DNA of 64,000 nt from Macrostomum lignano (taxonomy: Eukaryota). Both the position numbers and the translations under genes were made by a program. Within the stretch, counting starts at the first letter, position 1; each line of letters begins with the position of its first letter. Below the pieces are notes generated by a model. That model was not told where the DNA came from. It did not search any database and saw only the letters and a program-made list of their open reading frames with translations. The stretch is from assembly GCA_002269645.1 (NCBI GenBank), contig NIVC01000013.1, positions 496,001-560,000 of the forward strand, in the 5' to 3' direction. Positions 35,246-54,333 of this stretch are shown here, one piece after another.

Positions 35246-36034
35246 CAATGAATAACACCAATGCAGTCCTACGTTGGATGATAATACTTGCCACAAAAAC
35301 TTGCTTTAATTTAACTTTTATTATGCAAATTCTTTTGATTGAAACATTTCAAGTCACTTTGTGCAAATATTTTCACTTGCAACCCAGTAGTGACTGCTGG
35401 ATATTGCTGGATTTTTTCGATTAATAAAATCTATCAACAGTTTTGAAGTGACCAATATTTCTATCGCGCATTGTTTTAATTTGGGGGCCAATTATTATAG
35501 CCGATATCATTTTTCATTCAATTTTTATTGACCGCAATCAATCATTTAGAAGCATGTTAATCAAGTTTATTTTTTATAGTTTTTTTTCACAAAAATTTGA
35601 GCTGAAATTAAAAAAAATAATTTCCGATGATAAAACGCGCTGCTTGTCTACTTGTAAGTAGTGTACTGTTGGCGTTCTTAATGCTGGTATATACAGACTC
35701 TATCTGAGTTATACAGACTCTGTGCATTAGTTAATGAAAAAACATTCTGCCACCCTTTTGCCTACGTGGTTACCTATTTGTAACGGAATGCAGATATGTA
35801 ATTGTACCGTAAAGCATATAGTATATGCACGTGTTTTATAATAGCAATAAAATTGTGCAATTCATGCGGAAATTGCTTTAATTTGTTAGTACCCAATTGT
35901 ATCGGATATAAATACAATGCAAATATCTTTACTCTGTTGCCAGCGCGCGGTTTAACTGTTTTAAAAATCATTTGCGCAAACAGAGCATTATAGATTTTTT
36001 AAATATTTCTTTGTGATTTACCTTGTAGTGTCCG

Positions 36035-38215
36035 TGTGAACTGGCTATGTGACAGGTGAACTGGCTGTGTGACAGGTGAACTGCTGTGAACTGGCTGTGT
36101 GACAGGTGAACTGGCTGTGTGACAGGTAAACTGGCTGTGTGACAGGTGAACTGGCTGTGTGACAGGTGAACTGGCTGTGTGACAGGTGAACTGGCTGTGT
36201 GACAGGTGAACTGGCTGTGTGACAGGTGAACGGGCTGTGTGACAGGTGAACTGGCTGTGTGACAGGTGAACTGGCTGTGTGACAGGTAAACTGGCTGTGT
36301 GACAGGTGAACTGGCTGTGTGACAGGTGAACTGGCTGTGGGACAGGTGAACTGGCTGTGGGACAGGTGAACTGGCTGTGTGACAGGTGAACTGGCTGTGT
36401 GACAGGTGAACTGCTGTGTGACAGGTGAACTGGCTGTGTGACAGGTGAACTGGCTGTGTGACAGTTGAACTGGCTGTGTGACAGGTGAACTGGCTGTGTG
36501 ACAGGTGAACGGGCTGTGTGACAGGTGAACTGCTGTGTGACAGGTGAACTGCTGTGTGACAGGTGAACTGCTGTGTGACAGGTGAACTGCTGTGGGACAG
36601 GTGAACTGCTGTGAACTGTCTGTGTGACAGGTGAACTGCTGTGGGACAGGTGAACTGCTGTGAACTGGCTGTGTGACAGGTGAACTGCTGTGAACTGGCT
36701 GTGGGACAGGTGAACTGGCTGTGTGACAGGTGAACTGCTGTGTGACAGGTGAACTGGCTGTGTGACATGTGAACTGGCTGTGTGACAGGTGAACTGGCTG
36801 TGTGACAGGTGAACGGGCTGTGTGACAGGTGAACTGCTGTGTGACAGGTGAACTGCTGTGTGACAGGTGAACTGCTGTGTGACAGGTAAACTGGCTGTGT
36901 GACAGGTGAACTGCTGTGAACTGGCTGTGTGACAGGTGAACTGCTGTGAACTGGCTGTGTGACAGGTGAACTGGCTGTGTGACAGGTAAACTGGCTGTGT
37001 GACAGGTGAACTGGCTGTGTGACAGGTGAACTGGCTGTGTGACAGGTGAACTGGCTGTGTGACAGGTGAACTGGCTGTGTGACAGGTGAACGGGCTGTGT
37101 GACAGGTGAACTGGCTGTGTGACAGGTGAACTGGCTGTGTGACAGGTAAACTGGCTGTGTGACAGGTGAACTGCTGTGAACTGGCTGTGGGACAGGTGAA
37201 CTGGCTGTGGGACAGGTGAACTGGCTGTGTGACAGGTGAACTGGCTGTGTGACAGGTGAACTGCTGTGTGACAGGTGAACTGGCTGTGTGACAGGTGAAC
37301 TGGCTGTGTGACAGTTGAACTGGCTGTGTGACAGGTGAACTGGCTGTGTGACAGGTGAACGGGCTGTGTGACAGGTGAACTGCTGTGTGACAGGTGAACT
37401 GCTGTGTGACAGGTGAACTGCTGTGTGACAGGTGAACTGCTGTGGGACAGGTGAACTGCTGTGAACTGTCTGTGTGACAGGTGAACTGCTGTGGGACAGG
37501 TGAACTGCTGTGAACTGGCTGTGTGACAGGTGAACTGCTGTGAACTGGCTGTGGGACAGGTGAACTGGCTGTGTGACAGGTGAACTGCTGTGTGACAGGT
37601 GAACTGGCTGTGTGACATGTGAACTGGCTGTGTGACAGGTGAACTGGCTGTGTGACAGGTGAACGGGCTGTGTGACAGGTGAACTGCTGTGTGACAGGTG
37701 AACTGCTGTGTGACAGGTGAACTGCTGTGTGACAGGTAAACTGGCTGTGTGACAGGTGAACTGCTGTGAACTGGCTGTGTGACAGGTGAACTGGCTGTGT
37801 GACAGGTGAACTGGCTGTGTGACAGGTGAACTGGCTGTGTGACAGGTGAACTGCTGTGTGACAGGTGAACTGCTGTGGGACAGGTGAACTGCTGTGAACT
37901 GGCTGTGTGACAGGTGAACTGCTGTGGGACAGGTGAACTGCTGTGAACTGGCTGTGGGACAGGTGAACTGGCTGTGTGACAGGTGAACTGCTGTGTGACA
38001 GGTGAACTGGCTGTGTGACATGTGAACTGGCTGTGTGGCAGGTGAACTGCTGTGGGACAGGTGAACTGCTGTGGGACAGGTGAACTGCTGTGGGACAGGT
38101 GAACTGGCTGTGTGACAGGTGAACTGCTGTGGGACAGGTGAACTGCTGTGAACTGCTGTGTGACAGGGGAACTGGCTGTGTGACAGGTGAACTGCTGTGA
38201 ACTGCTGTGTGACGG
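36035..38215. repeat. 19/20-bp minisatellite GTGACAGGTGAACTGGCTGT with an internal 850-bp duplication
   Basis: Over 100 units; rare variants recur exactly 850 nt apart. Confidence 0.96.
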
Positions 38216-40840
38216 AAACTATCTGTATATAACAGGGAAACAACTGCATATATCACGGAAAATATCTGCATATAACAGGTAAACTATCTGCCTATAACAG
38301 GGAAACTATCTGTATATAACAGGGAAACTATCTGCATATAACAGGGAAAATATCTGCATATAACAGGGAAAATATCTGCATATAACAGGGAAAATATCTG
38401 CAAAAAACAGGGAAAATATCTGCATATAACAGGGAAAATATCTGCATATAACAGGGAAAATATCTGTATATAACAGGGAAACTATCTGCATATAACAGGG
38501 AAAATATCTGCATATAACAGGGAAAATATCTGCATATAACAGGGAAAATATCTGCAAAAAACAGGGAAAATATCTGCATATAACAGGGAAAATATCTGCA
38601 AAAAACAGGGAAAATATCTGCATATAACAGGGAAAATATTGATGGGTTTCGACCTTCCGGCCCCCTTGTGGGGAAGCCTTCGGGCCTCAGGCTCAGAAAT
38701 AAATCAATTAGAGTCCTGGCCCCCCACTCCTGTCAGATGGTCAGCCCCATGGTAGCTTGATCGTGTGGCGAGCAGTCTAGGTCCTATAGCTAAGAGAGGG
38801 ACAGCGAGAGACAAGCAGGGAGAATTTTGAAGGTAGAGATCAGCTAATCCGCAGATTAACTAACCTGCTGCCACCAGCCCGTGCGTCCTGGCTCACCAAA
38901 CCGGGACTTTCGAAATCGGGCTTCCGACTAGAGGGGGCTTAGCACTTACATGTACCTGCCAACTAGTGTCTTTTTGCTGTCAATCTCGAATTCATAGCCG
39001 ATGATAAGGGACACTGCTGGGACTCGATCGCATTGGCCATGCAGGTACAGAGGGGACTTGTGCAGGGGGTTCTTGCAGTGGCGAGACTATGGGGTAGCTA
39101 CATACTATTACATTGCTAAATACGAGAAATGTACTTTTGGCCTTCAACGCGCCAACCAGCCTCTCCTAGCGCTGATGATAGACTAACTCGAACATCGGAG
39201 ACCGCATGATTCATTACCCGAGCCGCTTGGCGAACCTAGACTGCACAGAGTACATCTCTAGCGCTGATTTTGCACTATTGGCAATTTCGCTAACTGATTT
39301 CATAGATTGATCGACTGAGAACTGCCTTGCCATTGGTCCACTGTGACCGGCACCTACTAGCTTAGCTCCTCATCTGAGCCATCGGAGAGCAAAGAAATAA
39401 AACCGATAAAAATAACTGTTAGATTTAACCTTCTCCTTAGTTCACTTCACACTTCAGACTGAATTGGAGTTTTAGACTACTAACAGTATTATTAAGTGAT
39501 TTCTGCCTCAGTAACAGCACTACTGAACAAAATGAGCAAAAGTGTGCGCCTAATCCAGCTACTGAAACAGGGACAGATAAGGAATCACCCAATCAAGCAA
39601 GTCTAGGTAGCCTCTCACCCAACCAATCAGAAACTCAACAGCCGGAGACCAGGTAATCCACAGTGACCGAAGCGGCTTAGTGCTTCGCAGCTGTAGGCCC
39701 GGGATGATGCTGATGTCACAATCTTCGCAGATAGCTAGCAGGTGATGTTCTTAATCTTGATGTTCGCTGCTGACGACCGGGGGATTCATCCTTGATGATG
39801 ATGGGGGAGTCGCGATCCGGGGATCAAGAGACGACGGTCGCGAGTAGCAGCCGGGTGTCAGGTGACCGGCCAAGTTGAAGTCCGAGCGGGACAAAAGCGC
39901 CGGTTTTTATAGCCGCCAACTGGACTGCAATTTGTTATGATGGAACACCTCGATTCTGATTGGCTGAGCCGATTTGTTATAGCGCACGTCGAATTTTCTG
40001 ATTGGCTGAGCTTGTTTCCACCCAAAGTCACGTGACCAAGAGATCCTATCAGTTCCCTCGGGGCCATAAAAATACGACAGGTGCGGTCATAAATCACTCA
40101 AAACCGCTAACTAATGATTTATGACCTTTCGCGTAGGAATGACAAAAATTAATGAAAAAATATACACTAGAAAGCTCTTATTAAGTAGAAAGTGAAGATA
40201 ATGAAGAGAAATCGCTAATCGCTAATCCCAAAGTACTTTTAGGGGTAAAACGCATAGCTGTCAAAGCTGTCACACGCTTGAGTGAACACGAACAATAAGC
40301 CCTGACCTCATAAATCTTGATGGCCTGGCAAAATGATGAGAAAAAAGCCATCATTCGCATCCCCTCAGACCATCTGGCGCCCGCCTCGACACTGAGTGAG
40401 GTGCAGGTGGCTGTCAGACCAGCTCAGACGCTATGATTTATGACCCAAAAGCAGCAAAAAACCGCGCCTATGTTATTATAACTACAAGTATGGCAGATTA
40501 ATATAGCTACAGAAGTCCTACTAGTATGAATTCTAGAAAAATTACAAGAGGGAGAAAAACGCCTATAGCCTGCTGTTAGTAGGCTAGCAAGTTTGGAACC
40601 CATGTGCGAGCGTGAAATTTGGAAAAAAAAGTGCGTCCTCATCAATATCTGCATATAACAGGTAAACTATCTGTATATAACAGGTAAACTATCTGTATAT
40701 AACAGGTAAACATCTGCATTTAACAGGTAAACTATCTGTATATAACAGGTAAACTATCTGTATACAACAGGTAAACTATCTGTATATAACAGGTAAACTA
40801 TCTGCATACAACAGGTAAACTATCTGCATATAACGGGTAA
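38216..40840. repeat. 22-bp minisatellite ATATCTGCATATAACAGG(G/T)AAA, split into 38216-38639 and 40645-40840 by an insertion
   Basis: Removing 38640-40644 plus one ATAT restores an intact repeat unit. Confidence 0.93.
38640..40644. mobile_element. 2005-bp solo-LTR-like insertion (TG...CA ends, 4-bp ATAT TSD)
   Basis: Begins TGATGGG and ends CCTCATCA (imperfect inverted ends). ATAT at 38636-38639 and 40645-40648. No long ORF or internal direct repeat. Minus-strand CCAAT boxes (~40000, ~39960) followed by CTATAAAAA (39912-39904). Insertion boundaries are solid; the solo-LTR class is inferred. Confidence 0.75.
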
Positions 40841-41423
40841 ATGCCTATAATCCACCGGTTTTCCCAACGTCTTCAGTCAAAGAGATTCTCTTAAGTGTTT
40901 ACCATGTCTTTGCAGCACATAAATATGACACCAGGGACATCAATCAAATTCCGTTGCAGCATTAGCTGAATATTGACAGGTAGATTGAATGTATTTGTCA
41001 CATTGCGAATCTACTTGTTGAACACTTTATTCTCTGCCTATATTCACTTCAGACATTTGGGCCACTTGCATTTGTTTGAATCAGCTTCTTCATTGACAGC
41101 AAGAGAGCTTTATTTAATTGCTACTCAAACGCAAAGCCATCGGGCTTGTTTGCCAAAAAATTAAGGAGCTGTTTTGGATGGGGTTGAATTAGGAGTTTGC
41201 TGAATTGCAATCAATAGTGCACTCACACATGCTTAACGGATAATATCAATGAATTGATTGCTTCTTACTTGGCAAAAGCATACTCGGTTTTTAGTTAAAA
41301 TACAGTATGCTGAATTCCTGAAACCAAAAATGCAGAACCCAGAAAGAGAACTGAGTTATGACTTAGGGTTGCTCTCAGCATGGATCTCTCAGGGGGTCAT
41401 CCCAGTCATCAGGGTCACGATCA

Positions 41424-42746
41424 GCTGGCGCCCCCTCTGTAGCTGGCGCCCCCTCTGTAGCTGGCGCCCCCTCTGTAGCTGGCGCCCCCTCTGTAGCTGG
41501 CGCCCCCTCTGTAGCTGGCGCCCCCTCTGTAGCTGGCGCCCCCTCTGTAGCTGGCGCCCCCTCTGTAGCTGGCGCCCCCTCCTGTAGCTGGCGCCCCCTC
41601 TGTAGGTGGCGCCCCCTCTGTAGCTGGCGCCCCCTCTGTAGGAGGCACCCCCTCTGTAGCTGGCGCCCCCTCTGTAGCTGGCGCCCCCTCTGTAGCTGGC
41701 GCCCCCTCCTGTAGCTGGCGCCCCCTCTGTAGCTGGCGCCCCCTCTGTAGCTGGCGCCCCCTCTGTAGCTGGCGCCCCCTCTGTAGGTGGTACCCCCTCT
41801 GTAGCTGGCGCCCCCTCTGTAGCTGGCGCCCCCTCTGTAGGTGGTACCCCCTCTGTAGCTGGCACCCCCTCTGTAGCTGGCGCCCCCTCTGTAGCTGGCG
41901 CCCCCTCTGTAGCTGGCGCCCCCTCTGTAGCTGGCGCCCCCTCTGTAGCTGGCGCCCCCTCTGTAGCTGGCGCCCCCTCTGTAGGTGGTACCCCCTCTGT
42001 AGCTGGCACCCCCTCTGTAGCTGGCGCCCCCTCTGTAGCTGGCGCCCCCTCTGTAGCTGGCGCCCCCTCTGTAGGTGGCACCCCCTCTGTAGCTGGCGCC
42101 CCCTCTGTAGCTGGCGCCCCCTCTGTAGCTGGCGCCCCCTCTGTAGCTGGCGCCCCCTCTGTAGCTGGCGCCCCCTCTGTAGCTGGCGCCCCCTCTGTAG
42201 CTGGCGCCCCCTCTGTAGCTGGCGCCCCCTCTGTAGCTGGCGCCCCCTCTGTAGGTGGCACCCCCTCTGTAGCTGGCGCCCCCTCTGTAGCTGGCGCCCC
42301 CTCTGTAGCTGGCGCCCCCTCTGTAGCTGGCGCCCCCTCTGTAGCTGGCGCCCCCTCTGTAGCTGGCGCCCCCTCTGTAGCTGGCGCCCCCTCCTGTAGC
42401 TGGCGCCCCCTCTGTAGCTGGCGCCCCCTCTGTAGGTGGCGCCCCCTCTGTAGCTGGCGCCCCCTCTGTAGCTGGCGCCCCCTCTGTAGCTGGCGCCCCA
42501 CTTTGTAGCTGGCGCCCCTCTGTAGCTGGCGCCCCACTTTGTAGCTGGCGCCCCCCTCTGTAGCTGGCGCCCCCTCTGTAGCTGGCGCCCCCTCCTGTAG
42601 CTGGCGCCCCCTCTGTAGCTGGCGCCCCCTCTGTAGCTGGCGCCCCCTCTGTAGCTGGCGCCCCCTCTGTAGCTGGCGCCCCCTCTGTAGCTGGCGCCCC
42701 CTCTGTAGCTGGCACCCCTCTGTAGCTGGCGCCCCCTCTGTAGCTG
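41424..42746. repeat. 18-bp GC-rich minisatellite CTGGCGCCCCCTCTGTAG
   Basis: About 73 copies. Confidence 0.97.
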
Positions 42747-43224
42747 AATGGCAGAAAATTTCTGTGGACCCCTTCAGAATTCTTAGACAACATCATCACA
42801 GCGTCAGTTCCAGAACTTTCCGCTCTCTGGGACTCGCGTACCAGTCCTCCGTTCGGATGGAGCAGAATAGCTAGTTGTAAAAAACTTATCAAGCAGGGGT
42901 TTTTTTAGTTTTAACGCTCCAGCCTTGAAAGAATGGCGTTCAATATTATTAATAATAAATCTAAACGTAGATCCATAAACGGCAAAATTCAGATGCAGGA
43001 TGTGTCTGCATCTGTGCAACCAGGCTATTGTCTTGAAGTGGCTGCAATCAGTGCCACTGGCTTCACAAGCGGGATCTTCTTCAGAAATTCAGAAATGTTT
43101 TACCTCACGTTGGAGCAAAATGTATAGCCCCTAATTACCGGTATAACAAATTTCGTCAGGGAAGATTTCCAATATGAGATACCATGAGACATTTGCAATC
43201 AGACTGAGATTCCCAGTGAGAGAG

Positions 43225-43650
43225 ATTTCCAATATGAGAGATTTCCAATATGAGAGATTTCCAATATGAGAGATTTCCAATATGAGAGATTTCCAATATG
43301 AGAGATTTCCAATATGAGAGATTTCCAATATGAGAGATTTCCAATATGAGAGATTTCCAATATGAGAGATTTCCAATATGAGAGATTTCCAATATGAGAG
43401 ATTTCCATTATGAGAGATTTCCAATATGAGAGATTTCCAATATGAGAGATTTCCAATATGAGAGATTTCCAATATGAGAGATTTCCATTATGAGAGATTT
43501 CCAATATGAGAGATTTCCAATATGAGAGATTTCCAATATGAGAGATTTTCAAAATGAGAGATTTCCAATGTGAGAGATTTTCAATATGAGAGATTTCCAA
43601 TGTGAGAGATTTTCAATATGAGAGATTTCCAATATGAGAGATTTCCAGCC
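43225..43650. repeat. 16-bp repeat GAGAGATTTCCAATAT just upstream of the DEG/ENaC gene
   Basis: About 26 copies. Confidence 0.95.
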
Positions 43651-43870
43651 TGAGAGAGATTATCAACTTGAGAGAGCTTTCAGAGATTTCTTTGAGAGAG
43701 ATCTAAGAGAGTTCCAACCCGAGGGATTTTAGCCAGTTAAAGCCCAATTAAACAGAGCGTGTTCAGATCCAATGAAATGATTTTTACCAATAGCATAACT
43801 TGGTTGTTACTTATAATTAACTAATGACGAACTTCCTTGCTTTTCAAAATCCTGTAGCCACACAGCCGCC

Positions 43871-46748
43871 ATGAGTCCGGACACCACTGCGACCGCAGTG
43901 AGTAGCAGTCTGCGCCGATTCTGCGACTACACAACTGCCCACGGACTTGGCAGATTCGGCGCACAGACCGGCAGATTCGGTCGCACAGTGTGGCTGTGCT
44001 TCCTGCTTGGCACCTACACCGGTTTCACCTATCACGTGTACACCTTGGTTGCTCATTTCGTCAGCACGCCATTGACTACTAGTCTGACCGAGTCGCTGCC
44101 TTTCAAGCTGCCAGATTTGTACTTCTGTCCGAGCGATATTGTGCCGATGAGCCGAGTGAGCAAGCCGATCGATAGCGCCTCGGTGATGCGCAGCAGCTCA
44201 TGCAATCGGATCTGCCGGGAGCGGCAGCTCGAGTTCGATATTGAGGAAGACTTTGAGGCTGGCAATGGCAGCAAGAAGACGAAATTCAGCGACGCCGCAA
44301 TGGCTCTCTCGGACGCGTTCATAGCTGCGGAGGAGGCGCTGGTGCAGGCGATGGTGTTTAAAAGCTCGGGTGAGCGGCAGATTGATATCCACCTACCGAT
44401 ATGTAGCGTAAGTAGTTATAGAGTAGAATGTTCAACGTTAGACTACATGTATTTACAGGTGCTAGTGACTTTATTTAGTTAATTTTAATTCCAAAGTCTT
44501 TAAGGCAGAATAGCTCAGCGGTTGACGCTTTCGACTCTCGCGCCGAAAGGCCCGGGTTCGAATCCGCGCGCTATCAAAGATTAATTTGAATAATTTGAGA
44601 AAATTAGACTGGGTGCTTGTACGATACTTGCGCATCAAGGCGACAGAGGACAGTGCGTGCTCAGGGGTCAGTGGGATTGCCACGACTGCTCACATTCTCG
44701 CCTGTCCTCCGTCGCCTTGGAACTGCCGCACTGCTCAAAGGCATTAATTATTTGGAAACGGGGCACCTTGAAGTCTTGATTTTGACAAAAATATTAATAT
44801 GACAGCCAAGTATTAGTAGTAATAACAATTTTCACTTGTTTGTTCGGTGTAAAATACCGATATGTATCGAAAAAATATTTCGTAAAAAATTTCAAAATAA
44901 CTTATCCGTATAACTCATTGTGGTTTACCGCCGATATGTATAGTAATACACTTTATAAAGGGTTTATTTTGCTTTCGCTACGCAGCACATCCCAGCCAAT
45001 GTCGAACCACAGTCGCCGGTGAAGAGTACACTGGCAACCGCAGCTGGGCAGTGGTGTACTCCTCCAGCTACCTGCCCGTGTCATCAGGCACAGATGTCGC
45101 CGCCGCCAACGCCAAGCCGTTCTCAAATCGAGTGGCCTGCATTTCTTGGAATTCGGCCGCTCGAAAATTATTATCAAATTCGAACTATACTACTGAAGGT
45201 AATTCGACACTGAACTCTGATTCTATGCGACTCGCTTATCGTCTGCTGGCTTTGAATTTGTCGGAAAACGACAACCGATGTCGACAACCAGTGGGTTTGC
45301 CACTGACAGAGTTTTACGGCATCGCCATTCGTAAGTGTGCAAAGTTTATAGACTAATTTATAACAACCAGGGGTACTTTTAAGCGTCTGTTGGCACTAAG
45401 TTGATAGTAGCATACCCAACCCCATAGACACCACCCTTATAATCCCCGTATCACATAGACACCACCCTTATAATCCCCGTATCCTATAGACACCACCCTT
45501 ATAATCCTCGTATCCCATAGACGCCACCCTTATAATCCCGATATCCCATAGACACTACCCTTATAATCCTCGTATCCCATAGACACCACCCTTATAATCC
45601 CCGTATTCCATAGACACCACCCTTATAATCCCGATATCCCATAGACATCGCCTTTATAATCCCCATCTCCCATATACTTTACAACCCCATAGACACACAT
45701 ATAAAGTCAATAGGTGTACATCAACAAGGCATTAAAAGTATTTTAATGGCATTGAAACCGATGTATTTTAACAATCACCAACTGGACTAACAGACCCAAT
45801 AAAGGTGTACGCTGGTTGCTACAGCAGCTCTTTCATAAGCACCGCATTTTTCGATCAATGCACGTTTGATCTAAACCTGCTGACGCAAGAGCTATGCGCC
45901 GAATGCTGTTATAAAAAACGTTATACTCACATGGGTCTCTATTGGAATCAGTGCGTTTGCGGAAATGCAACCCTGGCTTTGAGTACCAGCAGTTGGGTCA
46001 TGTCAAGTGACGAGAGTCAATGCTTCGACTCGTGTCCTGGCAACGAGAGTCAGGTGTGCGGCGGCTTTATAGAATTTGCTAGCGTCTATCAACTGCGCAA
46101 CAAAGGTGATTTTCCTTCTCTTGTGGTTTCTGCTAAGAAATTACAAAGCGACATGACAGAGCGTGAGGTGGGTGTAACTGTACACTGCGGTGTAGAGAGT
46201 AAGCTATTAGTAGAACATCGAAGAGAGGTAATCACCATAGGCGTGAGGTGGGTGTAACTGTACACTGCGGGGTAGAGAAGTGAGCTATTAATAGAACAAC
46301 GAAGAGAGGTAATCCCCATAGGCGTGAGGTGGGTGTAACTGTACACTGCGGGGTAGAGAAGTAGAGAATTAATAGAACAACGAAGAGAGGTAATCCCCAT
46401 AGGCGTGAGGTGGTTGTAACTGTACACTGCGGGGTAGAGAAGTAGAGAATTAATAGAACAACGAAGAGAGGCAAGCTTCATGGGCTTGAAGTGTGATTAC
46501 GCGTATCAAGGAATACGAGCGTATCTAGTGATAGAGAAGCAATTGAACCAGTGTGGATTGAGTTTTGTACATAGAGAATTCACTTATTCTTTAAACACAC
46601 GTAGAAAGCGCGCCCCTGCGGATACCGTTCCGAATGTCGCTGCCAAGTTTCAACGCCGGGCCCTACTGTTTCTATCTAGACAGCGACAATGTGAATGAAT
46701 TGTCGGCTACCTATTGCAATGTTCCCTATTGCAGTGAGTGTAATTTTA

Positions 46749-46801
<53 letters not shown>

Positions 46802-48430
46802 CAATCCTTCAAGCGCTTGACAACGCCGAACTTGACTGCCTTCGCACTGACGCAAAAGGCGATGTTGGCAGTGTTGAAGTGAGCCGATACACTGGCCAGC
46901 TGGTCAGCTCAGGTGCTATCAACGAGGACGCGGGTAGCAACAAGGACAAGAATACTTGCCAGCCGTGGACTTTAGTGAAGCAGCAACTAGAAGCTGGGCT
47001 TTGGAAATACCCGATTAGATTGAGCGGTGCTGGTTTTAGTAAGTATATTTAGTACATAGGATAAGCCTATATAGGATAAGCCTTATGAAAGTTTATACCA
47101 AGAATAGCTACTATGTATATACTAACTACAATACTAATTATCCATTCGTTTAGATTCGACCTCGATGCTCGTAACTGCGGTTACCATAGAAACGGCCGAC
47201 TACGATTTGCATAGCATCAATAGCGGAGCCTATTGCCGCGCTGCTAGGGTTGTTTTGGATTATAAGCAAATCGCTCACAGTGGAACGTTTTCTTTTGGGT
47301 GAGCTGAACTGGTGACTGGGGGCGGAAAGCTGCTAAATGAGGGAGCGGAAAGCTGCTTAATGGGGGCGGAAAAGTGCTACACAGGAGCGGAAGACTGCTT
47401 GATGAGGGCGGAAGACAGCTAAATAGGGCCTGAAGACAGCTAAATGGGGGCGGAAGACAGCTTGATGGGGAGCGGAAAACAACTTGATGGGGGCGGAAGA
47501 CAGCTTGATGGGGGCGGAAGACAGCATGATGAGAGGGGGGGGCGGAAGACAGCTTGATGGGGGGCGGAAGACAGCATGATGGAGGGGGGCGGAAGACAGC
47601 ATGATGGAGGGGGGCGGAAGACAGCTGATGGAGGGGGGCGGAAGACAGCTGATGGGGAGCGGAAGACAACTTGATGGGGGCGGAAGACAGCTTGATGGGG
47701 GGCGGAAGACAGCTTGATGGGAGGGGGGCGGAAGACAGCATGATGGAGGGGGGCGGAAGACAGCTGATGGAGGGGGGCGGAAGACAGCTGATGGGGAGCG
47801 GAAGACAACTTGATGGGGGCGGAAGACAGCTTGATGGGGGGCGGAAGACAGCTTGATGGGAGGGGGGGCGGAAGACAGCATGATGGAGGGGGGCGGAAGA
47901 CAGCATGATGGGGGGCAGAAGACAAATCGATGGGGGGCGGAAGACAGCTTGATGGGGTAGGGCAGAAGACAGCTTGATGGGGTAGGGCGGAAGACAGCTT
48001 GATGGGGTAGGGCGGAAGACAGCTTGATCGGGGGCGGAAGACAGCTTGATCGGGGGCGGAAGACAGCTTGATGGGGTAGGGCGGAAGACAGCTTGATGGG
48101 GGGCGGAAGACAGCCTGCAGCAGTAATAAAGACTAATAGATAAGAAACGAACCGTTGTCCACTGCCTGCTTTCAGGCGGCTCGAAGTGGCATCACCAAAC
48201 AGCCCCGTGTGCCCCACAGAGACCAACAAATTCGTGGCGTTTGAGAACTGCATCTGGATCAAGGCTTGTCGTGAGTTGAGGCTTTTACTTGTTGCGGAGA
48301 GTGTAAGATGGGGAAAAAAAGAGAGGAGAGAGAGATGAGAGGAGAGGAGAGAGGAGAGAAGAGAGGAGAGACAAGAGAGGAGAGACAAGAGAGGAGAGAC
48401 AAGAGAGGAGAGACAAGAGAGGAGAGAGAG

Positions 48431-48462
<32 letters not shown>

Positions 48463-51400
48463 GAGAGGAGAGAGAGAGGAGAGAGAGAGGAGAGGAGAGA
48501 GGAGAGGAGAGAGAGAGGAGAGGAGAGAGGAGAGAGAGGAGAGGAGAGAGGAGAGGAGAGGAGAGAGGAGAGAGAGGAGAGGAGAGAGGAGAGGAGAGGA
48601 GAGAGGAGAGAGAGGAGAGGAGAGAGGAGAGGAGAGGAGAGAGGAGAGAGAGGAGAGGAGAGAGGAGAGGAGAGGAGAGAGGAGAGAGAGAGAGAGGAGA
48701 GAGAAGAGACAAGAGAGGAGAGACAAGAGAGGAGAGACAAGAGAGGAGAGAGAGGAGAGAGAGAGAGGAGAGAGAGAGGAGGGAGGATACGAAAACAAGA
48801 ACGAGGGGGAGGAGAGGGGAAGAGAAATGAGAGCAGAGATGAGCGATAAATGTTGGCAAAAGTAAATGAAATAAAGGTCCAATAAAACTCAGAAATTCCA
48901 AACTTTGAACCCAAACCCTATCCAGACTCCGTCGTCCGCAGCATCGCTGGCGTTATACGCGACCGCATCGGCGGCGCCAATTTATTGCGCCAATTTGGCG
49001 CCAGCGCCAGCGCTGGAGTAATCGCTTGTTCGGTTGGCGAGGCCACCTGCAGTTCATCGGATTTTCTCACCTTGGCCCATCCGGATTTCGGACTCTGCCA
49101 TCGATTAGACAGTCGCCGGATGACCAAACTGCTCGGGCAGAGTCAGAAGCCTTCTGACGTCAGCCTCTCCGTGACCTTCTTCACTGACTCCGCAGATTCG
49201 GCCGGGCGGAGCTACGCAAATCTGACCAAGCTGAGGCACATCTTGGCTCCAGGATTGTGGCAGCAGAAGCTGGCTGGCAGCTCGGCGGCTTTGAAGGTCG
49301 GCGCGGGTAGAGGATGGCAGATAGAGATGGCAGTGAAGGTAGAGGATGGCAGATAGAGATGGCAGTGAGGGTAGAGGATGGCAGATAGAGATGGCAGTGA
49401 GGGTAGAGGATGGCAGATAGAGATGGCAGTGAGGGTAGAGGATGGCAGATAGAGATGGCAGTGAGGGTAGAGGATGGCAGATAGAGATGGCAGTGAGGGT
49501 AGAGGATGGCAGATAGAGATGGCAGTGAGGGTAGAGGATGGCAGATAGAGATGGCAGTGAGGGTAGAGGATGGCAGATAGAGATGGCAGTGAGGGTAGAG
49601 GATGGCAGATAGAGATGGCAGTGAGGGTAGAGGATGGCAGATAGAGATGGCAGTGAGGGTAGAGGATGGCAGATAGAGATGGCAGTGAGGGTAGAGGATG
49701 GCAGATAGAGATGGCAGTGAGGGTAGAGAATGGCAGATAGAGATGGCAGTGAGGGTAGAGGATGGCAGATAGAGGCTGGCAGATAGAGATGGCAGTAAGG
49801 GTAGAGGATGGCAGATAGAGATGGCAGTTGAGGGTAGAGGATGGCAGATAGAGATGGCAGTGAGGGTAGAGGATGGCAGATAGAGGCTGGCAGATAGAGG
49901 CTGGCAGATAGAGATGGCAGTAAGGGTAGAGGATGGCAGATAGAGATGGCAGTAAGGGTAGAGGATGGCAGATAGAAATGACAGTAAGGGTAGAGGATGG
50001 CAGATAGAGGCTGGCATATAGAGATGGCAGTGAGGGTAGAGGATGGCAGATAGAGATGGCAGTGAGGGTAGAGGATGGCAGATAGAGATGGCAGTGAGGG
50101 GTAGAGGGTGGCAGATAGAGATGGCAGTGATAGGTAGAGAATGGCAGATAGAGATGGCAGTGATAGGTAGAGAATGGCAGATAGAGATGGCAGTGATAAG
50201 TAGAGAATGGCAGATAGAGATGGCAGTGATAGCACAGAGCAGATGCAGCACAGCAGTCAATATCCAAAGCAACTGAGACGAACCCCTAACCAGGTAATGG
50301 TTGTCCCGGAGGGCGTGTACCCTCGGTCGCAGCAAGCCCTGACAGTGGGCCGCGGTCAGCACGTGGAACTGCGGCTTACCTACGACTCCACGGTGAGATA
50401 CCCGAAGCCGCCAGCGAGAGACTGCCAGATGGAGAAGGACAGACAAGCCGTGGTGTACGCTGTGCAGTCGTGGAATTCAACTGCCAGCAGTCAAGTGTGA
50501 GCGCTTCTTGGGGGTGTCTGAGAGTGATGAAAATTGAGGATGAGTGCGATGCTGGAGAAGGAGATTATAATGCTGATATTGGGATTATAATTATAGGATG
50601 AGATCAGAATAGGGCGAGATTAGATTGGGATCCGGTTAGAACATGGTGAGATTAGAACGGGTCAGATGAGAATGGATGAGATTAGATTTGGATGTGATGA
50701 GAATGGGTTGAGATTAGATTGGGATGAGATTAGATTGGGATGATATTACATTGGGATTAGGTTAAACTGGGATGACACCATTTTGGGATAGGATTAGAAT
50801 GGGGTGAATTAGAAGGCAATGAGACTAGAGTCGATCAAGTGAGACCATAGAGTTAATTGAGATTAGAATGGCGTGAGACTATATTGATTATTTATATTGA
50901 TAGTATAAGACCAGGTGGTTTGGCGGAGTTTCGAGACAATTAAGGATTAATAAGATTCATATGTAATCTTGACAGTAGCACAATTAACTTTGCATTAAAA
51001 ATAATTAAAATCAGCAGGGAAATCGTAAACATGACAGAAATCCGTGAGGCCACAACTTGGACTGAAAAGATTGACGCGCTGGCAAATATTCTCGCTGATC
51101 TGAACAGAAAGCGAGAAGTTAAAGAGTGAGGCATCTTTTAATTTCTGTTTGTGAAATTGTATTAAAATATGCTTTGCCCTACTAACAGTAGAAAAACAAA
51201 AAATAATCTCATAATTTCTTTTTAATGTTCTAAAAACGCTTTTCCTCTACTTTGAGTAGCTTCATGTGCATATAAAGTGTCAATAATACCCTAAAAACAG
51301 AAGTCGAATTAACAATCGGCTAATCTTCAAATCCGGCACCCAAGCCGACTGCATCGATGCTTATAAGGCGCGTCGTTTCTTAGAAAACTGCGGCTGCCTT

Positions 51401-52855
51401 CCGACGGCTCTCCTGCCGTTGCCAGCCAGCCTCATCGGTAGTTTCTGCTTCAATCAGAGTGGCGCTGGACACAATTTCACCTGGACCGAGCGTTGCCTAG
51501 CAACCGAAACAGCCAAGCTGCTGCAATACGAACATGAGGCCAGATCGAAATGCCCGCCTCCGTGCGAGACGTTAAGCTACTCCATCAGCCAGGCGGGCAG
51601 CCCGTGGCCCGGCCTAGAGCGAGAGTCGGCTGTAGGCTGGATGAAGCTGCTGGCAACGTCGCTCGGCTATCCCGATAATCCCACCGGCTCGAGGGCCATC
51701 GCCGGCATATTCGCTACTTACTTGCGCGCCGAGCGACTGTCCAGACAGCCAGCCGAAAAGAGGGATCTCAACCAGATGCTGGAGTTTCAGCAAAAACTAC
51801 TGTCGCTAGAGAGGCAATTCGCTCGTATTACTGTGAGAATTCATAGATTTTTTTCGTTTATTCTGCTGGTTCGTTTCTAAGCCATAGAGATTGAGAAAAT
51901 CAATCGGCTGTTCTCAGCCAATCAGCGATGGCTATGAGATAGAGAGAATCAATTGACCATTCTCAGCCAATTAGCGACGACTATAAGATAGAGACAATAA
52001 ATTGGCCATTCCCAGCCAATCAGTGATGACTATAAGATAGAGATACTCAATCGGCCGTTCTCAGCCAATCAGCGACGACTTTGAGATAGAGAGAATCAAT
52101 CGGCCGTTCTCAGCCAATCAGTGACGACTATGAAATAGAGATAATCAATTGGCTGTTCTCAGCCAATCAGCGACAAATTTGAGAGATAGAGAGAATCAAT
52201 CGGCCGTTCTCAGCCAATCAGAGATGACTATGAGATAGAGATAGTCAAATGACCATTCTCAGCCAATCAGCGACGACTATGAGATAGAGAGAATCAATCG
52301 GCTGTTCTTGGCCAATCAGCGGCGAGTAGGAAATAGATAGTAGAGGGAAATAATTTGCCTTCTCAGCCAATGAAAACTGATATTTCTGTAACCAATCAAG
52401 TGCAAAGAAGCAGAATGGGATATTTATGCATAACAAACATTAAATATCGATTTTTTTCGAACAGGTAACAGCGGCTCGAGAGTTCGGAGAAGAAATAGTT
52501 GAAGAGCCTGGCTACACTATCAAGGATCTGATGGCCGACATGGGAGGTGCGTATCCTTCCTTGGCCTCTGTCCACTCGTATCCAACCAATATTATCGATT
52601 ATTATTGATTTTTCAGGAGCGCTCGGTCTGTGGTCGGGGGTGTCAGTGCTAACCGCGTGCGAGCTCATCGAACTGATTGCCTACCTGGCCGGGGCAGCCG
52701 CCAACTCCCGTCTGTTGCGAGGCGCTCAATCGAAAGTGCAGGCCCAACAGGAGGCTGCTTCATCCGCTTCCGTTGCCGCCGCCGCGGCCTCGGCCACCGA
52801 CGAGTCCGAGATGATCGACAGTGCAGTCAGCCTTCAAAAGACTATTAACTTATAA
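43871..52855 (+). CDS. DEG/ENaC (amiloride-sensitive Na+ channel superfamily) subunit with kringle-like and WSC insertions; exons 43871-44369, 44986-45330, 45794-46105, 46605-46733, 46814-47038, 47154-47298, 48176-48270, 48926-49296, 50294-50496, 51301-51832, 52465-52546, 52617-52855 (3177 nt, ~1058 aa)
   Basis: N-terminal TTAHG motif, TM1 (RTVWLCFLLG), post-TM1 LPDLYFCP, IACSVGEATC..DF...HPDFGLCH, thumb cysteines, and TM2 ADMGGALGLWSGVSVLTACELIE with the GxS filter. All 11 introns are GT-AG with compatible phases and the summed length is divisible by 3. ATG sits in GCCGCCATG context. Confidence 0.88.
44504..44830 (+). mobile_element. tRNA-derived SINE-like element (or tRNA pseudogene head) in DEG/ENaC intron 1
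   Basis: A-box TAGCTCAGCGGTT at 44511 and B-box GGTTCGAATCC at 44555-44565 with tRNA spacing. Acceptor, anticodon and T stems are mismatched, so it is not a functional tRNA. Followed by ~250 nt of unique body and an AT-rich tail; 3' end approximate, no TSD found. Confidence 0.6.
45420..45690. repeat. 31-bp repeat CCCATAGACACCACCCTTATAATCCCCGTAT (channel intron 2)
   Basis: About 8 copies. Confidence 0.9.
45794..46105 (+). other. WSC carbohydrate-binding-type domain encoded by one phase 1-1 exon (312 nt)
   Basis: YAGCY...LTQELCAECC...YTHMGL..NQCVCGN...CFDSCPGNESQVCGG....SVY matches the WSC cysteine pattern. Confidence 0.88.
46160..46475. repeat. ~81-bp repeat x4 (channel intron 3)
   Basis: GCGTGAGGTGG at 46161, 46241, 46322 and 46403. 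Confidence 0.92.
46837..48269 (+). other. Kringle-like domain 2 (exons 5-7)
   Basis: LDCL...RYTG...TCQPW (exon 5), AYCRAA (exon 6) and SPVCP...ENCIWIKAC (exon 7): six cysteines in kringle order with enlarged loops. Confidence 0.65.
47330..48115. repeat. G-rich 21-23-bp repeat GGGGGCGGAAGACAGCTTGAT (channel intron 6)
   Basis: Direct reading. Confidence 0.93.
48310..48780. repeat. (GAGAG/GAGGA)n polypurine tract (channel intron 7)
   Basis: Direct reading. Confidence 0.93.
49305..50230. repeat. 32-bp minisatellite GGTAGAGGATGGCAGATAGAGATGGCAGTGAG (channel intron 8)
   Basis: About 28 copies, starting ~10 nt after the donor. Confidence 0.96.
51880..52370. repeat. ~49-bp repeat containing TTCTCAGCCAATCAG (channel intron 10)
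   Basis: About 10 diverged copies. Confidence 0.9.
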
Positions 52856-52974
52856 GCGCTGGGTGTGAATTAATAGCGTTGAACTCGTTGACTTAATTTA
52901 TATAGGTCTTAGCTAATGCGCTTATAATTTAGATAAACTATTGTCTATTAATCAATTGTTTAGATTATATTTGT

Positions 52975-53805
52975 CTGAGCACATCTGCACACAATAAATT
53001 TGTTTGAGTACATTTGCACACAATAAATGTGTCTGAGCACATCTGCACACAATAAATTTGTTTGAGTACATCTGCACACAATAAATTTGTTTGAGTACAT
53101 CTGCACACAATAAATTTGTTTGAGTACATCTGCACACAATAAATTTGTTTGAGTACATCTGCACACAATAAATTTGTTTGAGTACATCTGCACACAATAA
53201 ATTTGTTTGAGTACATCTGCACACAATAAATGTGTCTGAGTACATCTGCACACAATAAGTTTGTCTGAGTACATCTGCACACAATAAATCTGTCTGAGTA
53301 CATCTGCACACAATAAATGTGTCTGAGTACATCTGCACACAATAAATGTGTCTGAGTACATCTGCACACAATAAGTTTGTCTGAGTACATCTGCACACAA
53401 TAAATGTGTCTGAGTACATCTGCACACAATAAATGTGTCTGAGTACATCTGCACACAATAAATGTGTCTGAGTACATCTGCACACAATAAATGTGTCTGA
53501 GTACATCTGCACACAATAAATGTGTCTGAGTACATCTGCACACAATAAATGTGTCTGAGTACATCTGCACACAATAAGTTTGTCTGAGTACATCTGCACA
53601 CAATAAATGTGTCTGAGTACATCTGCACACAATAAATGTGTCTGAGTACATCTGCACACAATAAATTTGTTTGAGTACATCTGCACACAATAAATTTGTT
53701 TGAGTACATCTGCACACAATAAATGTGTCTGAGTACATCTGCACACAATAAATGTGTCTGAGTACATCTGCACACAATAAATGTGTCTGAGTACATCTGC
53801 ACACA
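52975..53805. repeat. 29-bp minisatellite TGAGTACATCTGCACACAATAAAT(T/G)TGT(T/C) downstream of the channel stop codon
   Basis: About 28 copies. Confidence 0.96.
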
Positions 53806-54333
53806 TTTAATTTGTCTAATAAAGTTCAAATTCAGACACTGCATCTGAGAAAAGACAATAATATTGCAGTGGAATGTACTCGAGTATTGAAGCGCCAAAG
53901 AAGATATTGAAGCGCCATAAATGGATGTTAAAGTGCTATGGACGACAGGTAAAATTGAATAAAACCTGGCAAATTGAAATCAATCCAGTTAAATTAAAGT
54001 TGACAGGTTCACTGTCGCGTCGTGCCTATATATGCACCGCAGCGTGACAGGATAACTTCAGAGTTGTCCACTATAAGAAGAAAAAAGGCCAGCGCTCATA
54101 TTTTGTTTCATTATTTGCCTAATCCATTTAAAGTCAAAGCGAAAATTGGGAAGAAAAGGCGTCACTGAAATTTAATTAAATTACCCGTCACTTTAGACTG
54201 CATGCAGGTTTGTTGAAATCTGTATAAATTCGCAACTCTTTACAGACCCACACAAAGCATCAAAGTTGTTCTTTTATCGAGGTCAAAAGGCAGAGGCTTT
54301 TATCCTACATCATTACAGGAACTAAGAATTGCA

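What the first reader, a model, noticed from the sequence alone, without database searches (positions are those of the whole stretch)
43871..52855. DEG/ENaC channel carrying kringle-like x2 plus WSC modules in its extracellular finger region
Seen: exons 2-7 (44986-48270, 1251 nt = 417 codons) lie between the post-TM1 segment and the conserved C..C..DF...P.FG.C motif and encode two six-Cys kringle-like domains and a WSC domain. The channel core looks intact (HG motif, TM1, TM2, GVS filter). Established: the finger is the variable, ligand- and protease-sensing part of DEG/ENaCs; kringles bind proteins or lysine ligands; WSC domains are linked to glycan binding; kringle and WSC occur together in Kremen receptors. 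I know of no characterised DEG/ENaC with these modules. Inference: this may be a channel gated or tethered by an extracellular protein, glycan or matrix ligand, i.e. a receptor-channel fusion. The ORF track shows only fragments of it.
Basis: partly seen in the sequence, partly recalled or inferred. Interest (0 to 1): 0.92.

Follow-up and report, generated by a model that had tools for sequence, protein, structure and literature searches.

The report
Sodium channel with built-in kringle/WSC modules
This is a real, intact flatworm-type DEG/ENaC sodium-channel gene carrying about 420 extra residues in its outer "finger": a kringle split by a nested WSC domain, then a second kringle. The layout is conserved in a small family of uncharacterised Macrostomum lignano proteins and apparently not described in any paper.

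Summary
I rebuilt a 12-exon, all GT-AG gene on the + strand (43871-52855, 1069 aa).

- **Channel core:** intact, with Pfam ASC 6e-42, an HG motif, TM1, TM2 and a GVS filter.
- **WSC:** passes Pfam's threshold.
- **Kringles:** Pfam misses them on the single sequence. A family profile searched against 1.84 billion proteins hits true multi-kringle proteins (E 4.8e-12). hhalign puts all six Cys in register (kringle A 97.5%, E 2e-11; kringle B 68%, E 6e-6).
- **New detail:** the WSC exon sits inside kringle A, between Cys3 and Cys4.
- **Conservation:** RNA-seq-derived Macrostomum lignano proteins (best 1052 aa, 37% identity, 97% coverage) are colinear through every module and share the cassette intron positions. 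At least four deep paralogue groups keep the cassette. The window is from another species.
- **Literature:** six literature searches turned up no paper that describes it.
- **Function:** binding of, or tethering to, an extracellular macromolecule that acts on gating is inference only. The kringle lysine-binding residues are not conserved.

Verdict: a new variant of a known channel family, of moderately high interest.

The parts
43871..44369 (+). Exon 1: start codon, cytoplasmic N-terminus with the HG motif (TAHG), TM1, and the first ectodomain segment up to the pre-cassette helices. It ends in phase 1.
   Evidence: Pfam ASC E 2.5e-11, profile positions 1-103. Donor GCTCGG|gtgagc. 46% identity to P0002 over this region.
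44986..45330 (+). Exon 2: N-half of kringle A, holding Cys1-3 (CRTTVAGEEYTGN..., ACISWNSAAR, NRCRQPVGLPLTEF). Phase 1-1.
   Evidence: hhalign against true kringles: Prob 97.5, E 2.2e-11, Cys in register. Conserved in all full-length M. lignano paralogues. M. lignano has an exon with the same boundaries.
45794..46105 (+). Exon 3: complete WSC domain (10 Cys) on a single phase 1-1 exon, nested inside kringle A.
   Evidence: Pfam WSC 41.8 and 36.6 bits, above the cut-off of 27.8. Foldseek of the homologue model against yeast Wsc1 7pz2: TM 0.74-0.76 and E 5e-4, E 3e-4.
46605..46733 (+). Exon 4: C-half of kringle A, holding Cys4-6 (GPYCFY...TYCNVPYC). Phase 1-1.
   Evidence: 66% identity to P0002. 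Aligned to GPWCY...YC.IP.C of true kringles. HGF kringle hit in the PDB profile search.
46814..47038 (+). Exon 5: start of kringle B (DCL...RYTGQ...NTCQPW), holding Cys1-2.
   Evidence: The PDB profile search aligns this stretch with ROR2, tPA and plasminogen kringles. Pfam gives sub-threshold Kringle hits on the same stretch of paralogues P0006 and P0007.
47154..47298 (+). Exon 6: middle of kringle B (ETADYDL...GAYCRAARVV), holding Cys3. It ends in phase 2.
   Evidence: The motif N[FY]CRAA aligns with NYCRNP of kringles. It is invariant across the family.
48176..48270 (+). Exon 7: end of kringle B (SPVCP...ENCIWIKAC), holding Cys4-6. It ends in phase 1.
   Evidence: Acceptor ctttcag|G and donor TGTC|gtgagt. 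Cys in register with true kringles.
48893..49296 (+). Exon 8: the channel ectodomain resumes, covering the end of the finger and the beta-ball, with C-x6-C, DF and FGLCH.
   Evidence: A family profile of this segment aligns with human ENaC gamma residues 250-298 (E 5.6e-5) and, weakly (E 0.09-0.5, not significant alone), with ASIC1 residues about 162-200. Pfam ASC resumes at profile position 150.
50294..50496 (+). Exon 9: ectodomain beta strands (VMVVPEG...RYPKPPARDC).
   Evidence: The junction is supported by alignment to P0002. tblastn gives 45% identity.
51301..51832 (+). Exon 10: Cys-rich thumb and palm region.
   Evidence: Pfam ASC E 2.8e-8, profile positions 291-383. phmmer alignment to FaNaC1 8on7.
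52465..52546 (+). Exon 11: pre-TM2 segment (EEPGYTIKDLMADMGG).
   Evidence: Aligned to the FaNaC1 pre-TM2 segment. GT-AG splice sites.
52617..52855 (+). Exon 12: TM2 with the GVS filter motif, cytoplasmic C-terminus and stop codon.
   Evidence: Pfam ASC profile positions 428-455. Hydropathy peak at aa 993-1019.

Best explanation
**Shown.** The region encodes one intact 12-exon gene for a DEG/ENaC (amiloride-sensitive sodium channel family) subunit of about 1069 aa.
- A 417-codon, six-exon cassette interrupts its extracellular finger. The cassette encodes a kringle split between Cys3 and Cys4 by a complete WSC domain, followed by a second kringle with long loops.
- The cassette holds 22 Cys and 7 N-glycosylation sequons.
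- It is as conserved as the channel core across a family of Macrostomum lignano paralogues.

**Inferred.**
- The protein assembles as a trimeric Na+ channel.
- The cassette is a Kremen-like binding module for a protein or glycan. It attaches the finger, the part of DEG/ENaCs that transmits ligand, protease and force signals to the gate, to an extracellular macromolecule such as a matrix, mucus or adhesive component or a secreted protein.
- Binding or pulling on the cassette would then bias gating, or position the channel.

I put about 0.9 on the architecture being real and expressed as one protein. I put about 0.4 on the binding or tether-to-gating mechanism.
For: **Gene model.** All splice sites are canonical and all phases agree, with no internal stops.

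**Channel core.** Pfam ASC is 6e-42 and WSC 5.5e-9. The HG motif, TM2 and GVS are present. The nearest solved relatives are FaNaC1, ASIC5 and ENaC.

**Kringle homology.**
- The family profile of exons 4-7 hits a protein with seven true kringles at E 4.8e-12, and others at 3.5e-7 to 1.5e-5, in 1.84 billion proteins.
- hhalign gives Prob 97.5 and E 2e-11 for kringle A with the WSC removed, and Prob 68 and E 6e-6 for kringle B. The six Cys are in register in both.
- All 11 weak PDB hits are kringles.
- UniProt names the kringle-B fragment of one paralogue 'Kringle domain-containing protein'.

**Structure.** The AF2 model of the homologue's cassette (pLDDT 69, pTM 0.66) matches yeast Wsc1 (E 3e-4) and Kremen1 KR-WSC (E 1.9e-3, prob 0.97).

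**One transcript.** M. lignano BOX15_Mlig007204g1 (1052 aa, 37% identity, 97% coverage) and other paralogues are colinear through every module. They share the cassette intron positions. That annotation comes from an RNA-seq transcriptome assembly.

**Constraint.** Cassette identity to the best homologue, P0002 (30-66% by module), is similar to that of the channel core (38%).

**Position in the finger.** The post-cassette segment aligns to ENaC gamma 250-298 and, at weak E-values, to ASIC1 about 162-200.

**Disulfide parity.** Each half of kringle A carries three Cys. All three canonical kringle disulfides link the N-half to the C-half, so the halves must fold together around the WSC. The Cys counts are; the rest is inference.
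Against: - No RNA evidence exists for this species. Exon 1 can splice in frame directly to exon 8, so a cassette-less isoform is possible.
- Pfam does not call a kringle on the window sequence, and kringle B is only moderately supported.
- The lysine-binding residues of kringles are not conserved, so the ligand class is open.
- The full-length AF2 model is poor (pLDDT 54). The geometry of the cassette relative to the channel is therefore unknown.
- No functional data exist for any family member. Three M. lignano DEG/ENaCs tested elsewhere gave no peptide currents, and it is unknown whether they belong to this family.
Confidence: 0.6

Rival explanations
1. The cassette is an optional, alternatively spliced block. 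The main product would be an ordinary channel of about 652 aa (exon 1 joined to exon 8), and the kringle/WSC form a minor or tissue-specific isoform.
For: Exons 2-7 together form a phase 1-1 block, and the exon 1 to exon 8 splice keeps the frame and gives a complete ASC protein. The WSC exon alone is also phase 1-1.
Against: Every M. lignano model that spans a cassette boundary runs straight through it: full-length P0002, P0016 and P0020, and fragments P0018, P0021 and P0001. No cassette-less form was seen in the clusters read. The cassette is as conserved as the core.
Confidence: 0.12
2. The model is an artefact that fuses two genes: a kringle/WSC gene nested in a long intron of a plain DEG/ENaC gene.
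For: Automatic ORF tracks show only fragments. There is no RNA for this species. Chimeric gene predictions are common in metazoan genomes.
Against: The cassette has no start codon, signal peptide, stop codon or membrane anchor of its own. It is on the same strand, and all phases match exons 1 and 8. Transcript-derived M. lignano proteins from two annotation efforts show the same fusion in several paralogues that are only about 33% identical to each other.
Confidence: 0.03
3. The cassette is an autoinhibitory or regulatory finger module like the ENaC GRIP domain. It would hold the channel shut until a protease or a conformational change relieves it, and it would not be a ligand or tether receptor.
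For: It occupies the finger stretch upstream of the segment that aligns to ENaC gamma 250-298. From published ENaC structures, as I recall them, GRIP lies in that stretch.
Against: There is no furin-type RX[KR]R site anywhere in the protein. Kringle and WSC are binding modules in all characterised contexts. Twenty-two disulfide-bonded Cys argue for a stable module rather than a releasable tract.
Confidence: 0.1
4. The cassette is a passive structural elaboration for folding, assembly, glycan shielding or subunit selectivity, with no external partner. The channel would be gated by a conventional small stimulus such as protons, a peptide or a constitutive leak.
For: The lysine-binding pocket is lost. 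The closest solved relatives are peptide-gated FaNaCs. The finger is the most variable DEG/ENaC region.
Against: About 420 residues are kept under constraint equal to the core across paralogues about 33% identical to each other. The surface-binding domain types are retained in order in all members.
Confidence: 0.25

Closest known systems
Macrostomum lignano BOX15_Mlig007204g1 (PAA-series protein, 1052 aa) and paralogues Mlig026586g1, Mlig006398g1, A0A1I8IV52 and A0A1I8H6Q0
   Same: The layout is colinear: HG-TM1, kringle A N-half, WSC, kringle A C-half, kringle B, the rest of ASC, then TM2. All cassette Cys are conserved, and the intron positions around the cassette modules are the same.
   Different: Identity is only 32-38% and the species differs. 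The loop lengths differ: the window has longer loops in kringle A and in the YTG-Cys2 loop of kringle B. These proteins are named only 'hypothetical' or 'WSC domain-containing' and have not been studied.
DEG/ENaC channels with elaborated fingers: ENaC (GRIP domain), C. elegans degenerins (extra Cys-rich finger domain) and FaNaC (finger peptide site)
   Same: The same superfamily, core fold and motifs. The extra material sits in the finger, upstream of the C-x6-C / FGxCYTFN segment.
   Different: The insert here is made of recognisable mobile extracellular modules (kringle and WSC) encoded on phase 1-1 exons. It is not a lineage-specific loop or tract. It has no furin sites.
Kremen1/2 ectodomain (Kringle-WSC-CUB; PDB 5FWS, 5FWT)
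   Same: Kringle and WSC domains packed together. After yeast Wsc1, Kremen1 is the only other PDB match with Foldseek probability above 0.9 for the cassette model (E 1.9e-3, prob 0.97).
   Different: In Kremen the domains are in series and are followed by a CUB domain and a single TM helix. Here the WSC is nested inside the kringle, a second kringle follows, there is no credible CUB (sub-threshold hit only), and the whole module is embedded in a channel.
Yeast Wsc1 cell-wall mechanosensor domain (PDB 7PZ2)
   Same: WSC fold: TM 0.74-0.76 and rmsd 2.6-3.1 A over about 100 residues of the homologue model.
   Different: Wsc1 is a fungal single-pass sensor that binds cell-wall glycans. Here the WSC is an insert in an animal channel, and its ligand is unknown.
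Flatworm membrane-bound multi-kringle proteins (Tmed-krg1 of Theama mediterranea, PMC9229212) and the kringle-GPCR P0008
   Same: Kringle modules displayed on a flatworm membrane protein. Tmed-krg1 is proposed to hold the cell to a secreted lysine-rich adhesive. The P0008 kringles are the best true-kringle match to the cassette profile.
   Different: Those proteins carry canonical, contiguous kringles in tandem, with no WSC and no channel.

Membership tests
DEG/ENaC (Pfam ASC, PF00858) | Profile match above the curated threshold across the ectodomain and both TM segments | tested here: met
   144.7 bits against a cut-off of 23.6, in two stretches flanking the cassette. PDB relatives are FaNaC1 at 4.3e-12, then ASIC5, ENaC and ASIC1.
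DEG/ENaC (Pfam ASC, PF00858) | Pre-TM1 HG motif, two TM helices, G-x-S filter in TM2 | tested here: met
   TAHG at aa 22-25. TM1 is aa 39-63 by alignment. The TM2 hydropathy peak is at aa 993-1019 and contains GVS.
DEG/ENaC (Pfam ASC, PF00858) | Conserved ectodomain Cys framework (FCP; C-x6-C; G-x-C-[YH]-x-F; thumb Cys cluster) | tested here: met
   YFCP (C86), C629-x6-C636, FGLCH (C652), and thumb Cys at 803-874.
DEG/ENaC (Pfam ASC, PF00858) | Trimeric assembly and an amiloride-sensitive Na+ current | not testable with these tools
   This needs heterologous expression and electrophysiology.
Kringle (PF00051) | Pfam profile match above the gathering score on the protein itself | tested here: not met
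   7.8 bits, E 5.8, against a cut-off of 34.3, for kringle A with the WSC removed. Nothing for kringle B.
Kringle (PF00051) | Statistically significant homology of the family profile to true kringles | tested here: met
   hmmsearch gives E 4.8e-12 to the seven-kringle protein P0008, and 3.5e-7, 9.5e-6 and 1.5e-5 to others. hhalign gives 97.5% and E 2.2e-11 for kringle A, and 68% and E 6e-6 for kringle B.
Kringle (PF00051) | Six Cys in the 1-6, 2-4, 3-5 framework | tested here: inconclusive
   The six Cys of each module align in register with true kringles and are invariant in the family. The disulfide connectivity itself was not determined, because no coordinates were available.
Kringle (PF00051) | Compact, contiguous domain of about 80 residues | tested here: not met
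   Kringle A is interrupted by a WSC of about 104 aa and also has long loops. Kringle B is about 147 aa.
Kringle (PF00051) | Lysine-binding pocket (Asp55/Asp57, Trp62, Trp72). This defines a subclass, not the family. | tested here: not met
   CRNPDGD is replaced by CRQPVGL, CRxPPGL or CRAARVV, and PWC by PYC or PVC.
WSC (PF01822) | Profile match above the gathering score, and the fold | tested here: met
   41.8 and 36.6 bits against a cut-off of 27.8, covering the full profile 1-82. The homologue model matches Wsc1 7pz2 at TM 0.74-0.76.
Kremen-type receptor (KR-WSC-CUB-TM) | Serial kringle, WSC and CUB domains followed by a single TM helix | tested here: not met
   The WSC is nested in the kringle. 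The only CUB signal is a sub-threshold hit (18-20 bits against 27) that overlaps the ASC finger. The membrane anchor is a two-TM channel.

The most novel reading that the evidence does not exclude
The kringle(WSC)-kringle cassette is a built-in receptor. It would make this DEG/ENaC directly gated by an extracellular macromolecule (a secreted protein, mucus, adhesive or matrix glycoprotein) or by force passed through such a tether. That would be a gating mode not known for the superfamily, and a natural case of a modular receptor ectodomain grafted into a channel's gating domain.
Probability: 0.3. Interest if true: 0.85.

Novelty: new variant of a known kind. Interest (0 to 1): 0.62.

Why it matters
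DEG/ENaC channels respond to protons, peptides, proteases and force, and the finger is where these inputs enter. A conserved family with a Kremen-like binding module spliced into the finger by exon shuffling would be a natural experiment in coupling a macromolecule-binding domain to a channel gate.

It bears on the long-running question of whether, and how, DEG/ENaCs are gated through extracellular tethers.

It is experimentally tractable. M. lignano has homologues, transgenesis, RNAi and in situ methods, and cassette-deleted constructs are in frame by design.

The nested WSC-in-kringle arrangement is also an unusual case of domain insertion into a small disulfide-knotted module.

Tried and rejected
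- **Pfam on single exons and on the spliced kringle regions.** No kringle call. This was resolved only with family profiles.
- **Word-indexed homologue search.** It found just one hit per query. The exhaustive HMMER search was needed to see the family.
- **Full-length AF2 of the M. lignano homologue.** pLDDT 54 and pTM 0.36. This is too poor to place the cassette on the channel. Its Foldseek hits are used only for local domains.
- **Foldseek.** It gave no isolated-kringle hits. Only Wsc1 and Kremen1 matched.
- **CUB domain after the cassette, completing a Kremen-like trio.** Only a sub-threshold hit overlapping the ASC finger. Rejected.
- **Cassette-skipped isoforms among M. lignano cluster members.** Only fragments, none skipping.
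- **Alternative exon 1 donor at 44407 (GTAAGT).** It puts exon 2 in a frame with no homology to P0002. Rejected.
- **Alternative exon 8/9 junctions.** Rejected on the basis of the alignment.
- **Species identification via the septin exon.** It shows only that the window is not M. lignano. The source species is unresolved.
- **tRNA-like stretch in intron 1.** Not called by ARAGORN or Rfam.
- **Second paralogue in the window.** None.
- **Literature.** Six searches found no paper linking DEG/ENaC to kringle or WSC domains (and paper text).

Full report
**1. What is in the sequence**

Reading the three forward frames between 43800 and 52900 shows islands of open frame separated by tandem repeats. 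From the DNA I placed splice sites by hand.

The result is a 12-exon gene on the + strand. Every intron is GT-AG and every phase is consistent. Exons:
- 1: 43871-44369
- 2: 44986-45330
- 3: 45794-46105
- 4: 46605-46733
- 5: 46814-47038
- 6: 47154-47298
- 7: 48176-48270
- 8: 48893-49296
- 9: 50294-50496
- 10: 51301-51832
- 11: 52465-52546
- 12: 52617-52855

The product is 1069 aa with no internal stop. I set that junction by homology (ALK|VMVVPEG against AMQ|VVVVPVG).

All the minisatellites fall in introns or flanks. No second copy of the gene lies in the window.

**2. The channel core**

Pfam ASC matches the spliced protein at 144.7 bits (cut-off 23.6). The match comes in two blocks on either side of the cassette. 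The HG motif (TAHG), TM1, the pre-TM2 segment, TM2 and the GVS motif are present.

With the cassette removed, the closest solved structures by sequence are:
- FaNaC1 (8on7, E 4.3e-12; 7yvb)
- ASIC5
- ENaC delta, gamma and alpha
- ASIC1

A family profile of the segment just after the cassette aligns with human ENaC gamma residues 250-298 (E 5.6e-5). It also aligns, at weak E-values (0.09-0.5), with ASIC1 residues about 162-200, the C-x6-C / GxCYTFN region.

**3. The cassette**

- **WSC (exon 3).** It is a full WSC domain: 41.8 bits alone and 36.6 bits in the whole protein, against a cut-off of 27.8.
- **Kringles, single sequence.** Pfam does not find them (E 5.8).
- **Kringles, PDB.** A profile of exons 4-7 with the M. 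lignano homologues gave 11 hits at E up to 10, the only ones among 177,635 distinct sequences. All are kringles (ROR2, tPA K2, HGF, plasminogen K4; E 0.24-7.1). None is significant alone.
- **Kringles, exhaustive search.** In an HMMER scan of 1.84 billion representative proteins, the same kind of profile retrieved the family itself and then true kringle proteins. These were P0008 (seven Pfam kringles plus a 7TM receptor, E 4.8e-12), P0010 (four kringles plus PAN, 3.5e-7), P0011 (9.5e-6) and P0012 (1.5e-5).
- **Kringles, profile-profile.** My own hhalign ran against 13 kringles cut from those proteins. It gives Prob 97.5 and E 2.2e-11 for kringle A once the WSC exon is removed. It gives Prob 68 and E 6e-6 for kringle B. 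The six Cys are in register in both.
- **Independent naming.** UniProt labels the kringle-B fragment of one paralogue 'Kringle domain-containing protein'.

**4. The WSC is nested in kringle A**

- Exon 2 carries Cys1-3 (CRTTxxGEEYxG; C[IM]xW; RCRxP).
- Exon 4 carries Cys4-6 (GPYCFY; YCNVPxC).
- The WSC exon lies between them.

All three exons are phase 1-1, and an exon 2 to exon 4 splice would also be in frame.

Each half of kringle A has three Cys. The canonical kringle disulfides (1-6, 2-4, 3-5) each link the N-half to the C-half. The two halves must therefore fold together around the WSC. This is an inference from the Cys counts.

Kringle B is about 147 aa, with long insertions between Cys2-3 and Cys3-4. 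The lysine-binding residues of plasminogen-type kringles are replaced.

The cassette holds 22 Cys and 7 N-glycosylation sequons, and the protein has no furin-type site.

**5. Structure prediction**

| Target | Mean pLDDT | pTM |
|---|---|---|
| Full-length M. lignano homologue | 54.2 | 0.36 |
| Cassette alone (397 aa) | 69.2 | 0.66 |

- The full-length model is too poor to place the cassette on the channel. Its local pieces still hit FaNaC, ENaC and ASIC, yeast Wsc1 (TM 0.74-0.76, rmsd 2.6-3.1 A) and Kremen1.
- The cassette model's matches with Foldseek probability above 0.9 are yeast Wsc1 (E 3e-4) and four Kremen1 entries (E 1.9e-3 to 8.8e-3, prob 0.96-0.97, about 170-214 aligned columns).
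- Isolated kringles were not retrieved by Foldseek.

**6. Relatives elsewhere**

The best homologue is Macrostomum lignano BOX15_Mlig007204g1 (P0002): 1052 aa, E 2e-205, 37% identity, 97% coverage, with Pfam WSC plus ASC. It is colinear with the window protein through every module, and all cassette Cys are conserved.

Its gene (locus L001, contig NIVC01000440.1) has exon boundaries at the same positions around kringle A-N, the WSC, kringle A-C and the start of kringle B.

The exhaustive search and the cluster look-up found more M. lignano members:
- Mlig034226g1 and Mlig026586g1 (1091 aa)
- Mlig013355g1 and Mlig006398g1 (1033 aa)
- A0A1I8IV52, A0A1I8IYW4, A0A1I8HMR1 and A0A1I8HZ70

They fall into at least three deep M. 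lignano groups, only about 33% identical to each other, with the window gene closest to the P0002 group (38%).

By region, identity of the window protein to P0002 is:

| Region | Identity to P0002 |
|---|---|
| N-terminus and TM1 | 46% |
| Kringle A, N-half | 39% |
| WSC | 35% |
| Kringle A, C-half | 66% |
| Kringle B | 30% |
| Rest of the channel | 38% |

The cassette is therefore under about the same constraint as the channel.

The GenBank annotation of that genome was made from an RNA-seq-based, genome-guided transcriptome assembly (PMC5730564). The joined architecture thus reflects assembled transcripts. Fragments from an independent annotation also run across the boundaries, and none skips the cassette.

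The window is not M. lignano. A septin exon in it finds nothing better than 66-71% identity. The family therefore exists in at least two species. No member was found outside M. lignano and this window.

**7. Literature**

Full-text searches that combined ENaC, degenerin or sodium channel with kringle or WSC found nothing relevant. Neither did searches on flatworm DEG/ENaCs.

Dandamudi et al. 2022 (PMC9234716) included M. lignano in a DEG/ENaC tree. They tested three M. lignano channels, saw no peptide response, and do not mention extra domains.

A flatworm membrane protein with six kringles (Tmed-krg1) is proposed to hold anchor cells to a lysine-rich adhesive (PMC9229212). This is a useful functional analogue.

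**8. How it most likely works**

Shown:
- One conserved gene with an intact channel core.
- A finger insertion made of kringle(WSC)-kringle.
- A cassette that is extracellular, disulfide-rich and glycosylated.

Inferred:
- In DEG/ENaCs the finger carries the ENaC GRIP domain, the FaNaC peptide site and part of the ASIC acidic pocket. I draw this from the published structures as I recall them.
- Kringle and WSC domains are binding modules in Kremen (Dkk), Wsc1 (cell wall) and Tmed-krg1 (adhesive).
- The most economical reading is that the cassette binds an extracellular macromolecule and couples that binding, or a pull, to gating or to channel placement. I put about 0.4 on this.

Rivals:
- A passive structural elaboration (0.25).
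- An optional spliced block (0.12).
- A GRIP-like autoinhibitory module (0.10).
- A gene-fusion artefact (0.03).

**9. Verdict**

The architecture is unreported in the searchable literature, but it is already present as unstudied predicted proteins in M. lignano. It is a new variant of a known channel family. Function is open. Interest is 0.62.

Noticed in passing
window 43220-53817 (introns and flanks of the channel gene): Eight of the 11 introns carry a different minisatellite, and the exons are the non-repetitive islands. Arrays: 45421-45674 (period 31), 46161-46471 (period 81), 46750-46801 (AACT), 47317-48114 (period 22/42), 48320-48778 (AG-rich), 49305-50229 (period 32), 50596-50813 (period 16) and 51887-52337 (period 49). 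The flanks hold 43220-43647 (period 16) and 52972-53817 (period 29). The whole 64-kb window is similarly saturated, for example 3400-4700, 10022-12700, 14533-15308, 19098-23104, 24021-25539, 35968-38271 and 41375-42892.
   Followed up: partly
window 17515-18459 and 25597-26145 (+): A homeobox gene, NK-like by eye. Its homeodomain is split after position 46 (Pfam Homeodomain E 1.1e-10) by a repeat-filled intron of about 7 kb. The second piece begins [14 protein letters not shown].
   Followed up: partly
window 30107-30703 and 31115-31624 (+): A septin-7-like gene (Pfam Septin E 2e-36 and 2e-46). The best database identities are only 66-71%, with no near-identical M. lignano hit, so the window comes from another species, probably a flatworm.
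   Followed up: partly
window 1411-4907 (-) and 61686-62249 (+): A major-facilitator transporter gene (MFS_1 E 3e-16 and 9e-12), interrupted by a CTGT-type repeat. Separately, an exon with a molybdopterin-dehydrogenase FAD-binding domain (FAD_binding_5 E 4e-11), like that of xanthine dehydrogenase or aldehyde oxidase.
   Followed up: partly
protein P0008 (ENA contig, unnamed; found): A 1084-aa protein with seven canonical kringles (Pfam E 7e-99) fused to a rhodopsin-type 7TM receptor. This is another case of kringles grafted onto a membrane signalling protein. Its source organism is unknown.
   Followed up: no
window 44500-44580 (intron 1): A stretch that looks like a tRNA or tRNA-derived SINE head (tagctcagcggt ... 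ggttcgaatcc). Neither ARAGORN nor Rfam calls it.
   Followed up: yes
model aa 590-647 (window about 48910-49083): A sub-threshold Pfam hit to CUB_M02D8_5_1st (18-20 bits against a cut-off of 27) just after the cassette. It overlaps the ASC finger segment and is probably chance. If real, it would complete a Kremen-like KR/WSC/CUB set.
   Followed up: partly
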